A stretch of 64,000 bases of DNA from Rebecca billardiae RCC1528 (GCA_965240325.2 OZ251222.1:3658001-3722000); one strand, 5' to 3'; positions 33,563-37,254 are shown, numbered from the stretch's first letter. Translations and numbers: made by a program. The notes: generated from the letters alone by a model not told the origin.

Positions 33563-36500
33563 ATGCGCTCGCGGGGCGCGCGGTGGACGATCCCAACCCC
33601 GCCCAGAGCGGCAGCGCCCTGGCGGCGTACACGCCATCGGCCGCATCTGTACGCCGGCACGTGCAAGCCGCTCCTCCTCGCGCTCGTGCTCGCGCCTGCC
33701 GCCTCCTGGGCGCGCCTCGCGCTCGACTCGGGCGAGGTGCTCGACGCGCCGCGCTACGGCTTCACGCGCGCGGACGCCGGACCTGTGAGCGCGCCGATCG
33801 TGCTGACCGAGGCGGACGATTGGCACGGCTGCCCGCCCGAGTTCGTGGGCGAGGGCGGTGCGTCCCGCCTCCGCGGTGCCCTCGTCGTCGCCGTCAACCC
33901 TCGCACGTTTGTGTGCAGCCCCGAACGTCACGCGCGCGCTGCCGCCGCGCTCGGCGCGGCCGGCTGGGTGTCGTTTGGCGAGCAGCACCTGGCGCTCGCA
34001 CCCGTACCGGGCTATATCGCTCGGCTCTGGCATGCCGGCGACGCGCGCGCCCTCGACGGGTTGCCCGGCGCGGACATCACCTCGAGCGCGGCCGCGCCGC
34101 TCGTCGCGTTGCTGCGTGCTGGAGGTGCGGCGCGCGGCACGCTCGTGCCCTCGAGCTCGGCGTACGATCGGCTGTTCACGCCGTGGTTGGTGGTGCTGTA
34201 CCGGATCGTGCTCGGCGCCGGCGTGGCTCTCTCGCTCGAGATGGTGCTGTCGCGCCTCCTCAGCTTCCTCCGCGCGGATGGGCGGCTGCGCGCGACGATC
34301 CCGCAGCTGATGCTCGGCCTGGACGCCCTTGCCACCGGACTGCGGCTCGCGCAGATCGCGCTGGACCCGCTGTTCCTCTGGCCGGGGTGGCTGCCGTACG
34401 CCGGGTCCGTGAGCCTGTGGGCCACGCCGATCAGCCTCTCCTCGCTCTCCACCTTCCTCTTCCTCGTGTACTTCTGCGAGGCGAGCGACGCGGCCGGGCT
34501 GGCGTCGCTCTCGATTGGCACGCGCTTCTACCGCCTGCTCGCGCTGCTGGTGCTCGCGCTCGTGGTGGGCATGGAGGCGGTGCTGATCTTCGAGCCCACC
34601 GCGTTTGGCGTGTTTCGGAGCGGCCAGCTGCGCATCCTGTGGTCCACCACGCTGCTGCCCATCCCGATCTGCGCGTTTGCGCTGTACGCGCACCGCCGCA
34701 CGCGCGCCAGCCTGCTGGCCGCGCTCGCGCCGCCGGCAGTGCTCCGCCGGCTGGTGGCCGTGATGCGCCGCGTGCTCGCGCTGGTGGTGCTCAGCGCGCT
34801 GCTCGGGCCGGCATGGCAGCCGTGCCTCTTCCGCCCGTGGCTGCGCCTCCTCCAGCCCGCGCCGCTCACCGTCCTCCACGCGCACCTCAGCGTGACCAGG
34901 CTGCGCGTCTTCTCGCCCGTGGGCGTCCGGCCCGCGCCGGGCCCGCTCGAGCGCGCGTGCGCGTGGCTGCTCGCGAGCGCGAGCGCGTGCGTGGCGCGCT
35001 CGTGCGCGGCTCCGGAGGGCGGCTCCACGCGGAAGAGCGTGGGCGACGACCTCGCTGGGCCGGCCGACGCCAACGTGCGCGCGGCGCGCCTTCCGCGCAG
35101 CTCGACGCCCCCGAGCACGAGCAGCAAGCAGCACGGCGCGCTCCGCGGACTCGAGCTGCTGCAGGAGGAGGGGCGGCGCACGCGCTCGCGGACGGTCGGG
35201 GCGTCGGCGCGCAGCTTCAACCTGAATGACGTGCACAGGCGTGGATCCGAGCGCAGCGGCGGGAGCTCGAACCGCTCGTCGCGCCGCAGCAGCGCCGCCT
35301 CGTCGATCAGCGCCATGTTGCGCCGCGCGAGGCGGTCGTCCATGCTGACGGCAGAGACGGCGGAGCGCGCGCCCAAGCCTCCAAGCGCGGCGCAGGCAAG
35401 TGCAAAGGTCTCGACCGCCTGGGCCGAGCCGGCCCCGCCGGCGAAGCGTGTGCTGGTTGAGGGCGTCACGGGTGGCAGCGCGAGCGGCGAATGCGCCGCG
35501 TCGTGTGTCATCCGCATCACACCCGCCGACGGTGCGGCGGCGGACGCGCAGCCGGGCGCCGTCGGCACCGGGCCGCAGGGCAGCGGTGGCAGCAACAGGT
35601 GGCTGCGCGCGCACGTGAGCGCGCCCGCCAAGAAGAGCCCACGCTCGTCTCTGCGCTCGCCGATTGCGAAGGCCGTGCTGGTGGCCACGCGCTTCAGGCA
35701 CGGCGTGCGCGTCCACCCACACCAAGCCGCCCCCGACCAGCCGCAGCCGGCCAAAAACACGGCCGGCCGCGCGTCTGCCGCACTCGGCTCGCCCTGTAGC
35801 TCGCCGACGTCTCGCAGCGCCGTCGGACCGGCGGGCGGCTACCCGCCGCACCTCGGCCTGGGCGTCTCCCTCGCCTTCCTGCGCGAGTTCGCCGCGGCGC
35901 ACGGCCTCTCTCCGTCGGACACGTCGTACCGCGCGGGCGAGATTGTGCGCGAGATCACCGCGGCCTCGCGGCTCTCTCTGTGCGAGCTCAAGCGGCTGCA
36001 GAGCACGGAGGGCGGCTGGCCGGCGGTGCGGCCGGCCACCCTCTTCGTGAGCCACGCGCAGGCGTGCTCCTTCGTGGACATGCTCGACGCGGTTGCGCTG
36101 CACATGGAGCTGCACTCGCTCGACCCGGCGCGCACGTACCTGTGGCTCGAGTGCGCGCCCGCCGCGCCGCCCGCCCGCCCGGCCCTGCCTGAAGCCCGCC
36201 GCCCGCTGCCCGGCCGAGCGCGCGTGCGTGCGGCCACACGCCCGCCCTCCTCGCACGCCCGCGCTGTGCGCGCCGCTGTGCGCGCGCGCCGCGCCGCCCT
36301 TGCCTCGCTGCGCTGACGCGCTTGCTTTCCCCTCGCCTCCCCGCGCCGCCCAGCCTGTGCTGCATCCGGCAGCACCGCGTGGACGCGGACGTGCTGCACA
36401 TCGGCGCCATCCTGCGGCACGTGGGCACGATGGTCACCGTCCTCGCGCCGTGGGACAGGCCCGTGGCCCTCACGCGCGTGTGGTGCGCGCGCGCGCGGGA

Positions 36501-37254
36501 GCGAGCGGCGGCCGCGCAGCCACGCCCCGCGCCTCCCCTCGCCTCACACGCCGTGCGCGCGCGCCCCTCTCGCAGGTGCCTGTACGAGGTGATGATGGCG
36601 AGCGCGCAGAGGAGCGGCCGGCCGCACGGCGCCGCAGAGGAGCAGCAGCAGCAGCAGCAGCCGCAGCAGCCGCCGGCCGCAGCCGCGGCGGAGGCCGGCT
36701 GGAGCGCGAGCGGCGGCGGCGCGGCCAGGCCGGTCGAGTTCTCCCTCGCACTCTCGCGCACGCAGCGCGAGCACTTCCTCCGCGCGCTCGACCGCGACCG
36801 CAAGCGCGTCCTCAGCGCGCTCACCTCGTTCGACGCGCGGCACGCCGAGGCGTCGCTCGCAGACGACCGCGCGCGCATCCTCGAGCTTATCGTCTCCAAG
36901 TTTGCGCCGAGCGGGCTGAGCGCGGCGCAGCTGCGCGCGCGCGGCGTCGAGCGCGACCCCGCGGACACGGAGGCCGCGCTCGACGCGTTCAACGCCACCG
37001 TGCGCGCCGCCATCCAGGCCGCGGTCTCGGGGCTCAGCTGGAGTGTCGTCACGCATGCCGCCGCAGGCGTGGCGGGCGGCACGCCTCCGAGCCCGAACAG
37101 TCTGCGGCACGCGCAGCGGCGCAGCGCGGCGGCCGCCCGCTCCGACGACTGGGCGGGGCGGCATGTTCGCGCTGGGCGACAAGGGCGGGTCGAGCGGCAG
37201 AGCAACGGGCTGAGCTCCTCGGCCGAGCTCCCGCCGAGCAGCCCCCTCCCGTAG
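33563..37254 (+). CDS. Receptor-like fusion: signal/PA-like ectodomain, ~7 TM helices, cytosolic TIR/HET-like domain; 3 exons (introns 36151-36353, 36483-36575), about 1131 aa
   Basis: Continuous frame from the hydrophobic N-terminus through six clear and one weak TM segments to FVSHAQACSF. Splicing at GTGCGC..CAG sites restores YLWLDLCCIRQH and PWDRPVALTRVWCLYE. Confidence 0.8.

What the first reader, a model, noticed from the sequence alone, without database searches (positions are those of the whole stretch)
33563..37254. 7TM receptor-like protein fused to a cytosolic TIR/HET-like domain whose catalytic motif is hidden by two introns
Seen: one reading frame carries a signal-like segment, an ectodomain resembling a protease-associated (PA) domain (GPVSAPIVL..GC..LRGALVVAV), about seven hydrophobic helices and a long Ser/Ala/Arg linker. 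It continues into LGVSLAFL..FVSHAQACSF..YLWLD|LCCIRQH..LAPWDRPVALTRVW|CLYE; the last two motifs assemble only after removing introns 36151-36353 and 36483-36575. Known: FxSH/Y ... WxD ... RxWCxxE is the signature of TIR and TIR-related HET domains, where that Glu is the NAD+-hydrolase catalytic residue. In protists I associate this variant with C-terminal TPR arrays, which are absent here. Inference: a GPCR-like surface sensor directly coupled to an NADase or nucleotide-messenger effector, i.e. a candidate immune or cell-death receptor of an architecture I do not recognise.
Basis: partly seen in the sequence, partly recalled or inferred. Interest (0 to 1): 0.9.

Follow-up and report, generated by a model that had tools for sequence, protein, structure and literature searches.

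The report
PA-7TM receptor with TIR/HET-like tail
This very GC-rich, haptophyte-type alga has a real three-exon gene for a membrane protein with an outside PA-like domain, about seven membrane helices and an inside domain shaped like TIR/HET immune and cell-death modules. I found no paper describing this receptor design, and its function is untested.

Summary
A three-exon gene (33563-36150, 36354-36482, 36576-37254; two GT-AG introns) encodes a protein of 1131 residues. In order it has a signal-like segment, a PA-like ectodomain, about seven membrane helices, a 280-residue Ser/Ala/Arg linker and a C-terminal domain of about 300 residues.

- **Gene model.** The spliced protein is colinear with intronless transcript-derived relatives across both junctions. 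The introns lose the codon-position GC bias that the exons show. No RNA run was listed, so splicing rests on homology and composition.
- **C-terminal domain.** It belongs to a large protist family (3094 cluster representatives). No curated Pfam or PADLOC model reaches threshold. A confident model (pLDDT 92) of the closest full-length relative's domain finds only TIR domains at the top (SARM1, RPPT, RUN1, AbTir; Z 5.8-6.9). The S, W.D, R.WC..E residues are nearly invariant and are intact here (Glu910).
- **Architecture.** At least 22 clusters share the whole layout, including two Diacronema lutheri proteins and an MMETSP transcript.
- **Earlier notes.** This scan had already noted at least eight paralogues on other DNA of this genome.
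- **Not shown.** A GPCR fold (my membrane-part model failed), NADase activity and ligand.

Verdict: real, undescribed variant of the ectodomain-membrane-TIR receptor theme; mechanism inferred.

The parts
33563..36150 (+). Exon 1: start codon to the first two bases of the Asp863 codon
   Evidence: ORF and sequence; GC3 periodicity; colinear with P0001
33665..33718 (+). Signal-like hydrophobic segment (residues 35-52), preceded by a 34-residue Arg-rich stretch
   Evidence: Hydropathy; aligns with the short signal peptides of family members
33719..34162 (+). PA-like ectodomain (residues about 53-200) with two conserved Cys (CPP...CS)
   Evidence: Family alignment A5. The family profile's only PDB hit is the PA domain of aminopeptidase 2ek8, E 0.023. 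Pfam PA is E 0.0071 to 0.2 in relatives, below the cut-off
34163..35005 (+). Membrane part (residues about 201-481): six strongly hydrophobic helices, a conserved weaker seventh (PW...N..SY...AF.P.G) and one further amphipathic helix
   Evidence: Hydropathy of the window protein. Family-averaged hydropathy and K/R-rich loops 1-2, 3-4 and 5-6. Alignment. Helices in the low-confidence model
35006..35845 (+). Low-complexity Ser/Ala/Arg/Pro linker (residues 482-761) with several RR.S sites; absent or shorter in relatives
   Evidence: still shows codon bias (GC3 0.87-0.91 against GC2 0.70)
35846..36150 (+). Start of the C-terminal domain: helical N-terminal part (LGLGVS..FLREF) and the first TIR-like strands with FVSHA (Ser830) and YLWL(D) (Trp861)
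   Evidence: model of the P0001 domain
36151..36353 (+). Intron 1, 203 nt, GT...AG, phase 2 in the Asp863 codon; splicing is required because the exon-1 frame stops at 36316
   Evidence: flat codon-position GC; ungapped homology across the junction
36354..36482 (+). Exon 2: ...D-LCCIRQH (Gln869) to PWDRPVALTRV-W (Pro895, Trp896, Pro899, Arg904, first two bases of Trp906)
   Evidence: GC3 1.0
36483..36575 (+). Intron 2, 93 nt, GT...AG, phase 2 in the Trp906 codon; in frame and without a stop if retained
   Evidence: the D. lutheri paralogue has an intron 6 nt further 3' in the same motif
36576..37254 (+). Exon 3: W-CLYE (Cys907, Glu910 at 36586-36588), a 44-residue Gln/Ala-rich insert (36598-36729), the rest of the domain to about 37047, a low-complexity tail, and the stop codon at 37252-37254

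Best explanation
This is one gene for a type-I-oriented multi-pass membrane receptor. It belongs to a small paralogous family in pavlovophyte-type haptophytes.

**Layout.** A PA-like domain faces outward. Seven helices cross the membrane. A long disordered, probably phosphorylatable linker leads to a cytosolic domain of about 300 residues. The core of that domain has a TIR-type fold and the intact family signature: Ser830, Trp861/Asp863, Gln869, Pro895-Trp896, Arg904, Trp906, Cys907 and Glu910.

**Most likely mechanism (inferred, not shown).** A surface cue such as a ligand, virus or cell contact acts on the ectodomain or helix bundle. It changes the packing or clustering of receptors and brings the cytosolic TIR/HET-like domains together. 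As in SARM1, plant TIRs and bacterial TIRs, the assembled domains would then use the conserved Glu to cleave NAD+ or a related nucleotide. That would either make a small-molecule signal or deplete NAD+, feeding stress, defence or cell-death signalling.

**Shown.** The gene structure (by homology and composition), the architecture, its conservation, the TIR-like shape and the conserved motif.

**Inferred.** The topology, the GPCR-type fold, the enzymatic activity and the biological role.
For: **Gene model**
- Canonical splice sites.
- Ungapped colinearity with the transcript-like contig protein P0001 over both junctions.
- Core-profile match at E 5e-41.
- Codon-position GC.
- An intron in the same motif in a D. 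lutheri paralogue.

**One chain**
- The MMETSP transcript product P0154 (850 residues) and about 22 cluster representatives carry both the PA-7TM part and the C-terminal domain.

**Topology**
- Signal-like start, conserved Cys pair in the ectodomain, and K/R-rich odd loops.
- A conserved seventh helix.

**TIR-like domain**
- Model of the P0001 domain: pLDDT 91.8, pTM 0.89.
- 9 of Foldseek's top 10 PDB hits are TIR domains; the best is E 0.045.
- VIA-align: SARM1 Z 6.9 (117 aligned, 3.6 A), RPPT Z 6.4, RPV1 6.2, RUN1 6.1, AbTir 5.8. Every listed entry with Z of 5 or more is a TIR domain or a nucleoside 2-deoxyribosyltransferase.
- The best PDB profile hit is the Paracoccus TIR 3h16, over FVSHAW...W.D, at E 0.21-0.25.
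- The best viral hit is a TIR/WD40 protein.
- Conservation in the core alignment: Glu 107/110, Arg 108/111, Trp 104-107/111, Ser 100/110.
- In the model the Glu sits in the helix after the third strand. From my own knowledge, the W-x-x-x-E spacing equals that of plant TIR S.WCL.EL and SARM1 W638/E642.

**Context**
- HET-TIR homology, and HET-annotated sequences in Emiliania, are published (PMC4986451).
- Gephyrocapsa huxleyi TIR genes with extracellular or multi-helix N-termini respond to virus (PMC12489294).
Against: - No RNA evidence for this locus.
- No curated TIR, HET or defence-system profile reaches threshold. HET reaches 13.7 bits against a cut-off of 22.5; PADLOC gave nothing.
- All structural Z-scores are below 8, a range the tool warns can reflect a common arrangement. 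Unrelated alpha/beta folds follow at Z of about 4.6.
- Residue-level superposition of Glu910 on a catalytic TIR Glu could not be printed.
- The folded domain is that of P0001 (38% identical), not the window's own.
- The seventh helix is only weakly hydrophobic, and an eighth helix follows it. If that one spanned the membrane, the domain would lie outside the cell.
- The fold of the membrane part was not established: pLDDT 39, no sequence matches.
- The biochemical activity of HET domains is unknown (PMC10890737, PMC12881547).
Confidence: 0.55

Rival explanations
1. Same architecture, but the TIR/HET-like domain is an adaptor rather than an enzyme. On activation it would nucleate homotypic assemblies with the many soluble proteins of the same organisms that carry this domain fused to TPR arrays, as Toll-like receptors recruit MyD88 or MAL.
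For: The same domain is abundant in soluble TPR proteins: 32 of 63 relatives scanned, and fold matches of TM 0.74-0.78 to TPR-bearing eukaryotic clusters. Adaptor TIRs (MyD88, MAL, IL-18R beta, TRAM) score nearly as high as the enzymes, at Z 5.2-5.8. HET activity is undetermined (PMC12881547).
Against: Near-invariance of Glu, Arg, two Trp and Ser across more than 100 diverged sequences fits an active site better than an interface. The best-scoring structures are NAD-cleaving TIRs. The two roles do not exclude each other.
Confidence: 0.25
2. The gene model is wrong. The membrane part and the TIR/HET-like part would be separate genes, or the C-terminal part a decaying pseudogene. The long GC-rich linker frame would be open only because stops are rare at 75% GC.
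For: No RNA data. Overlapping ORFs of hundreds of codons occur in many frames here. The 280-residue linker and the 44-residue Gln/Ala insert have no counterpart in P0001.
Against: About 22 relatives, among them an MMETSP transcript and the single-ORF transcript-like contig of P0001, carry both parts in one ORF, with linkers of variable length. The linker keeps third-position GC bias in the gene's frame. All conserved residues of the domain are intact. There is no in-frame ATG-led start with a promoter-like AT-rich gap between the parts.
Confidence: 0.07
3. The protein has an even number of membrane spans, either six or eight, so the TIR/HET-like domain faces the outside or an organelle lumen. 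It would then act on extracellular nucleotides or as a binding module.
For: The seventh helix falls below the hydropathy threshold in the family average. A further helix (residues about 461-481) follows it.
Against: The seventh helix is conserved in sequence and length in all 22 members. The following helix is amphipathic, carries Arg/Lys and in some members is followed by Cys runs, like a membrane-apposed helix. The soluble relatives of the domain are cytosolic-type TPR proteins. The linker is Arg/Ser-rich, typical of a cytosolic tail.
Confidence: 0.08

Closest known systems
Toll-like receptors and IL-1 receptors (ectodomain, membrane span, cytosolic TIR)
   Same: Receptor logic: an outside binding domain and an inside TIR-type domain in one chain. 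Structural matches include IL-18R beta, IL-1RAcP and a Hydra Toll-related receptor TIR at Z 5.0-5.5.
   Different: About seven membrane helices instead of one. A PA-like ectodomain instead of an LRR or Ig one. The TIR-like domain is about 300 residues, with an extra N-terminal helical part and C-terminal helices, and matches no curated TIR profile.
NAD-cleaving TIR domains (SARM1, plant RUN1/RPP1/RPPT, bacterial AbTir, ThsB, SPARTA)
   Same: They are the best structural matches, Z 5.0-6.9 over 107-145 residues. There is an F.SH-type first strand and a conserved Glu four residues after a Trp at the start of the helix after the third strand. The motif comparison with S.WCL.EL and W638/E642 is from my own knowledge.
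   Different: Sequence identity is only 12-17%. No Pfam TIR hit. There is an extra conserved W.D..C..Q block and extra helices. Activity is untested.
Fungal HET domain (PF06985)
   Same: The only Pfam model that touches the domain. It aligns to the YLWLD..CIRQ block (profile 45-75 of 146; E 0.03-0.3). Domain size is similar. Remote TIR homology and HET-annotated sequences in Emiliania, Ectocarpus and Thalassiosira are published (PMC4986451).
   Different: Scores are below the gathering cut-off in every member tested. The first and third blocks read FVSHAW and R.WCL.E, which is closer to TIR. No fungal-type NACHT, WD or lectin partners.
Protist TIR/HET-like domain fused to TPR arrays (unnamed family; oomycetes, haptophytes, green algae)
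   Same: The same domain over its whole length, at E down to 1e-60 and TM 0.74-0.78.
   Different: Those are soluble proteins with C-terminal TPR_12/TPR_10 arrays. Here the partner is an N-terminal PA-7TM module.
Gephyrocapsa huxleyi virus-responsive TIR proteins with extracellular or multi-helix N-termini (PMC12489294)
   Same: Haptophyte membrane proteins ending in a cytosolic TIR domain with a conserved Glu, proposed as receptor-like signal generators.
   Different: Those carry canonical Pfam TIR domains found with HHsuite. The example described has one membrane helix and a leucine-binding/EGF-like ectodomain. No PA-7TM module is described.
Diacronema lutheri KAG8458467.1 and KAG8460825.1 (hypothetical proteins)
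   Same: Same full architecture. KAG8458467.1 is 42% identical in the C-terminal domain (E 2e-51) and 34% in the N-terminal part (E 1e-28). KAG8460825.1 is 35% identical in the C-terminal domain (E 2e-30), and its N-terminal part matches at phmmer E 1e-34. KAG8458467.1 has an intron in the same WCLYE motif.
   Different: Different paralogues or orthologues. They are unannotated apart from a UniRef 'RGS domain' label on KAG8460825.1, which Pfam did not reproduce.

Membership tests
TIR domain (Pfam TIR/TIR_2 and related models) | Significant match to a curated TIR sequence profile | tested here: not met
   No TIR-family hit was listed for the window pieces or P0001 at E up to 1, for the 22 full-length members at E up to 0.1, or among the 25 families shown for 63 other relatives at E up to 0.01. 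No PADLOC TIR model hit. The family profile against PDB gives only 3h16 TIR at E 0.21-0.25.
TIR domain (Pfam TIR/TIR_2 and related models) | Flavodoxin-like five-strand alpha/beta fold superposable on solved TIR domains | tested here: inconclusive
   Model pLDDT 91.8. The top Foldseek and VIA-align hits are TIR domains, followed by nucleoside 2-deoxyribosyltransferases. Z is 5-6.9 over 107-145 residues at rmsd 3-5 A. All Z are below the tool's caution line of 8. The model is of P0001, not of the window protein.
TIR domain (Pfam TIR/TIR_2 and related models) | Conserved Glu at the catalytic position of the helix after the third strand | tested here: inconclusive
   Glu is present in 107 of 110 family sequences and in the window protein (Glu910), four residues after a conserved Trp, inside helix 179-190 that follows strand 162-166 of the model. 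Equivalence to SARM1 E642 or RUN1 E100 rests on motif spacing from my own knowledge. No residue-level superposition was available.
TIR domain (Pfam TIR/TIR_2 and related models) | NAD+ hydrolase or cyclase activity | not testable with these tools
   Needs a biochemical assay.
HET domain (PF06985) | Pfam HET match at or above the gathering score (22.5 bits) | tested here: not met
   P0001 scores 13.7 bits at E 0.082. Only 2 of 22 members hit, best E 0.029. P0005 is E 0.32. Only profile positions 45-75 are matched.
HET domain (PF06985) | Induces cell death when expressed | not testable with these tools
   Experimental property (PMC12881547).
PA domain (PF02225) | Pfam PA match at or above the gathering score (23.9 bits) | tested here: not met
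   Best is 16.9 bits at E 0.0071 (P0027). P0001 is E 0.12. The window piece gave nothing.
PA domain (PF02225) | Profile-level similarity to a solved PA domain | tested here: inconclusive
   The ectodomain profile A5 has a single PDB hit, residues 109-196 of aminopeptidase 2ek8, at whole-sequence E 0.023 (0.12 for the aligned stretch). From my own knowledge, that stretch is the PA insert of the enzyme.
GPCR-type seven-helix receptor | Seven membrane helices with the N-terminus outside and the C-terminus inside | tested here: inconclusive
   Six clear helices and one conserved weaker helix. K/R-rich loops 1-2, 3-4 and 5-6. A signal-like start. No dedicated topology predictor was available.
GPCR-type seven-helix receptor | GPCR fold or a match to a curated GPCR family | tested here: inconclusive
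   No Pfam hit in 23 members at E up to 10 and no PDB sequence hit. My two-sequence model had pLDDT 39, and its Foldseek hits to class B and class A GPCRs (E 0.07 or worse, TM 0.31 or less) carry no weight. Language-model features point weakly (0.78-0.80) to PRRT3, GPR137 and THH1/TOM1.
PA-7TM-TIR/HET-like family (unnamed; D. lutheri KAG8458467.1 and relatives) | Colinear homology over ectodomain, membrane part and C-terminal domain | tested here: met
   Both halves of the window protein match about 20 cluster representatives. N-terminal E values run down to 1e-45 and C-terminal E values down to 1e-49 for full-length members.

The most novel reading that the evidence does not exclude
A seven-helix surface receptor that signals without G proteins by directly switching on a built-in TIR-type NAD+-cleaving domain. 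That would be a one-component '7TM-TIR' immune or cell-death receptor class in haptophyte algae, possibly sensing viruses or cell-surface cues.
Probability: 0.3. Interest if true: 0.85.

Novelty: new variant of a known kind. Interest (0 to 1): 0.65.

Why it matters
TIR domains are the shared currency of innate immunity in bacteria, plants and animals. How microalgae sense viruses and trigger death or resistance is largely unknown.

This family couples an extracellular domain and a seven-helix membrane core directly to an intact TIR/HET-like domain. That gives a concrete, testable candidate for a surface-to-NAD+ signalling route in haptophytes.

The family would also offer a tractable non-fungal system for asking what HET-type domains do biochemically. 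Recent reviews still list that as unknown (PMC10890737, PMC12881547).

The finding is one more member of a paralogous family that this scan had already noted on other DNA of the same genome. Its value is therefore confirmation and gene-structure detail rather than a first sighting.

Tried and rejected
- **RNA evidence.** The look-up of sequencing runs listed no run.
- **Word-indexed protein searches.** The PA-7TM part of the window protein and the whole of P0001 found nothing beyond P0001 itself. The exhaustive representative search was what opened the family.
- **Folding the window's PA-7TM part.** With a two-sequence alignment it gave pLDDT 39. That wasted one of the two jobs. The later 23-sequence alignment A7 could not be folded. 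The Foldseek hits of the poor model are disregarded.
- **Sequence-profile searches of the 7TM part.** PDB and Pfam gave nothing.
- **Giant-virus relatives.**
  - A single-protein scan of viral contigs found no relative.
  - The structure search of viral proteins gave only a weak TIR/WD40 hit.
- **Further in-frame intron behind CLYEV.** The only GT...AG pair I checked (36589-36728) is 140 nt and would break the frame. The insert keeps coding-type GC3.
- **RGS domain.** The one UniRef names on KAG8460825.1 was not found by Pfam.
- **Source organism.** An exact look-up of the upstream 2832-residue ORF found no record.
- **Neighbouring genes.** A cNMP-binding protein lies downstream and a giant unannotated ORF upstream. 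Neither shows a functional link.
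Full report
**What is in the sequence**

The window is 61-84% GC in 2-kb windows. An AT-richer gap at 33300-33560 precedes a long + strand frame whose first ATG is at 33563.
- exon 1, 33563-36150
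- intron 1, 36151-36353 (203 nt, GTGCGC...CCCAG)
- exon 2, 36354-36482
- intron 2, 36483-36575 (93 nt, GTGCGC...CGCAG)
- exon 3, 36576-37254

The CDS is 3396 nt (1131 residues plus the stop codon). The junctions read YLWL-D|LCCIRQH and TRV-W|CLYE, each with a split codon, exactly as described.

Without intron 1 removal the exon-1 frame stops at 36316. Intron 2 is a multiple of three and carries no stop. If it were retained, 31 residues would be inserted between W and C and the frame would survive.

**Is the gene model real?**

No public RNA run was listed for the locus, so I used three indirect tests.

1. *Homology.* A search with the last 100 residues of exon 1 found P0001, a 764-residue protein on a 2333-nt single-ORF JGI contig that looks like a transcript.
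   - The spliced window protein aligns to it in two colinear blocks. The PA-like plus membrane part is 29% identical (E 1e-23). The C-terminal domain is 38% identical (E 4e-52) and runs without a break over both exon junctions.
   - Against a profile of 111 family cores, the spliced protein matches in one stretch (residues 820-918) at E 5e-41.
2. *Composition.* Exons show GC3 of 0.86-1.0 against GC2 of 0.45-0.65. Both introns are flat at 0.82/0.87/0.84. The linker and the Gln/Ala insert keep coding-type bias.
3. *Gene structure in a relative.* The Diacronema lutheri paralogue KAG8458467.1 has one annotated 109-nt intron inside the same WCL|YE motif, 6 nt further 3'. Another paralogue, KAG8460825.1, is intronless.

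I regard the model as sound. The start codon is uncertain: a 34-residue Arg-rich stretch precedes the signal core, which relatives lack. The low-complexity tail after residue 1063 is also uncertain.

**The N-terminal half**

*Ectodomain.*
- Family alignments show a short signal peptide, then a domain of about 165 residues with two conserved Cys and the pattern CPP.Y...G..VV......CS.E..AR.A...GAAAW.
- The family profile's only PDB hit is the PA insert of aminopeptidase 2ek8, at E 0.023.
- Pfam PA hits in relatives reach E 0.0071 and 0.12, below the curated cut-off.
- 'PA-like' is therefore plausible but weakly supported.

*Membrane part.*
- Hydropathy of the window protein and of the family average gives six clear helices.
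- A seventh helix is conserved in all 22 members (PW...N..SY...AF.P.G) but less hydrophobic. A further amphipathic helix follows it.
- Loops 1-2, 3-4 and 5-6 are rich in Lys/Arg. That fits N-terminus outside and, with seven spans, C-terminus inside.

*GPCR fold.* I could not establish one.
- The profile finds nothing in PDB or Pfam.
- Language-model features give only weak leads, 0.78-0.80, to PRRT3, GPR137 and THH1/TOM1.
- My two-sequence AlphaFold job gave pLDDT 39. Its weak GPCR hits carry no weight.

**The C-terminal domain**

*Family size and partners.* An exhaustive search with the P0001 domain found 3094 cluster representatives at E up to 0.001 and 663 at E up to 1e-10. Of 63 longer relatives scanned, 32 carry TPR_12-type arrays.

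*Curated libraries.* None names the domain.
- Pfam gives only sub-threshold HET hits on the YLWLD..CIRQ block: 13.7 bits against a cut-off of 22.5, and 2 of 22 members.
- PADLOC gives nothing.

*Model.* With a 144-sequence alignment, AlphaFold modelled the P0001 domain at pLDDT 91.8 and pTM 0.89. It has a helical N-terminal part, a beta-alpha core and extra C-terminal helices.

*Structure searches.*

| Search | Result |
|---|---|
| Foldseek, PDB | 9 of the top 10 hits are TIR domains; best E 0.045 |
| VIA-align, 48,161 representative chains | SARM1 TIR first at Z 6.4; then SpbK, RPP1, IL-18R beta and nucleoside deoxyribosyltransferases |
| VIA-align, second look at Foldseek's top 1000 | SARM1 Z 6.9, RPPT 6.4, RPV1 6.2, RUN1 6.1, AbTir 5.8; every listed entry at Z of 5 or more is TIR or deoxyribosyltransferase |
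| Family profile, PDB sequences | best hit Paracoccus TIR 3h16 over FVSHAW...W.D, E 0.21-0.25 |
| ESM Atlas, by shape | TM 0.74-0.78 over the whole 285 residues to eukaryotic TPR proteins; TM 0.40-0.41 to annotated TIR clusters |

All Z-scores are below 8, the tool's caution line. The fold assignment therefore rests on how uniform the hits are and on the motif, not on any one score.

*Conserved residues* (P0001 residue / window residue, count in the core alignment):

| Residue | Conservation |
|---|---|
| Ser583 / Ser830 | 100/110 |
| Trp614 / Trp861 | 107/111 |
| Asp616 / Asp863 | 95/111 |
| Gln622 / Gln869 | 90/111 |
| Pro648-Trp649 / Pro895-Trp896 | 101/111 and 104/110 |
| Arg657 / Arg904 | 108/111 |
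| Trp659 / Trp906 | 104/111 |
| Cys660 / Cys907 | 99/111 |
| Glu663 / Glu910 | 107/110 |

All of them are intact in the window protein. In the model the Glu lies in the helix that follows the third strand. From my own knowledge, that position and the W-x-x-x-E spacing correspond to the catalytic Glu of plant TIRs (S.WCL.EL) and of SARM1. I could not print a residue-level superposition.

**The architecture is a family**

- About 22 of the 150 best representatives also match the PA-7TM half.
- Named members are two Diacronema lutheri 'hypothetical proteins'. Another member is a full-length MMETSP transcript product of 850 residues. In relatives, therefore, both halves are on one mRNA.
- Linker length varies widely among members. 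The 280-residue linker here is at the long end of that variation.
- The window protein is at most about 42% identical to any member over a long alignment, so it is a distinct paralogue or orthologue.
- Earlier notes of this scan list at least eight further loci with the same architecture on other pieces of this genome. Those notes are unchecked leads. I confirmed the architecture independently, but not their 'GPCR-fold' statement.

**Mechanism**

What is shown: an intact, conserved, TIR-shaped domain tethered by a disordered RR.S-rich linker to a multi-pass membrane module with an outward PA-like domain.

What I infer as most likely: the protein is a surface receptor. Clustering or a conformational change would bring the cytosolic domains together and switch on Glu-dependent cleavage of NAD+ or a related nucleotide, as in SARM1 and in plant and bacterial TIRs.

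Rivals:
- The main rival is an adaptor role, recruiting the abundant soluble TPR proteins that carry the same domain. The two are compatible.
- A split gene model and an outward-facing domain are less likely, for the reasons given in the Rival explanations section.

**Literature**

- HET-TIR remote homology and HET-annotated sequences in Emiliania are published (PMC4986451).
- HET activity and structure remain undetermined (PMC10197012, PMC10890737, PMC12881547).
- Virus-responsive TIR proteins with extracellular or multi-helix N-termini are reported in Gephyrocapsa huxleyi (PMC12489294). That paper describes canonical TIR domains and no PA-7TM module.
- My searches for a seven-helix/TIR or HET combination found no description of this architecture.

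**Verdict**

This is a real gene and a real, conserved architecture. It is best filed as a new variant of the ectodomain-membrane-TIR receptor theme, built on an unnamed protist TIR/HET-like domain family. Function is untested.

Noticed in passing
window 36483-36575: Intron 2 is 93 nt, in frame and free of stops. A retained form would put 31 residues between Trp906 and Cys907, inside the presumed catalytic motif. That could be an off-switch by intron retention, or simply chance.
   Followed up: partly
L002 3762-3870 (Diacronema lutheri JAGTXO010000051.1) against window 36483-36575: The D. lutheri paralogue has its only annotated intron in the same WCLYE motif but 6 nt further 3', in the Leu codon rather than the Trp codon. 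Another paralogue (L004) has no intron. Intron position has slid, or introns were gained independently, within the family.
   Followed up: partly
window 35006-35845: The linker holds several RR.S / R..S sites (for example around residues 560-595). This resembles the phosphorylated tails of receptors. Some relatives have Cys runs just after the last helix, which may be lipidation sites.
   Followed up: no
window 37493-41014, + strand: The downstream ORF of 1173 residues has a cyclic-nucleotide-binding domain (Pfam cNMP_binding, E 3.4e-07). No link to the receptor gene is evident.
   Followed up: partly
window 22805-32392, + strand: The upstream giant ORF (3195 codons from the first ATG) has no Pfam hit at E up to 0.001 and no exact record in the protein collection.
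   Followed up: partly
P0027 (D. lutheri KAG8460825.1): UniRef calls this PA-7TM-TIR/HET-like paralogue an 'RGS domain-containing protein'. Pfam found no RGS domain at E up to 10. If a cryptic RGS-like segment sits in its linker, that would tie the family to G-protein signalling.
   Followed up: partly
window 33540-33562: A ...CCCCTTGCAG acceptor-like site lies 14 nt upstream of the ATG. There may be a 5'-UTR intron or an upstream exon, which would also explain the odd long N-terminal stretch.
   Followed up: no
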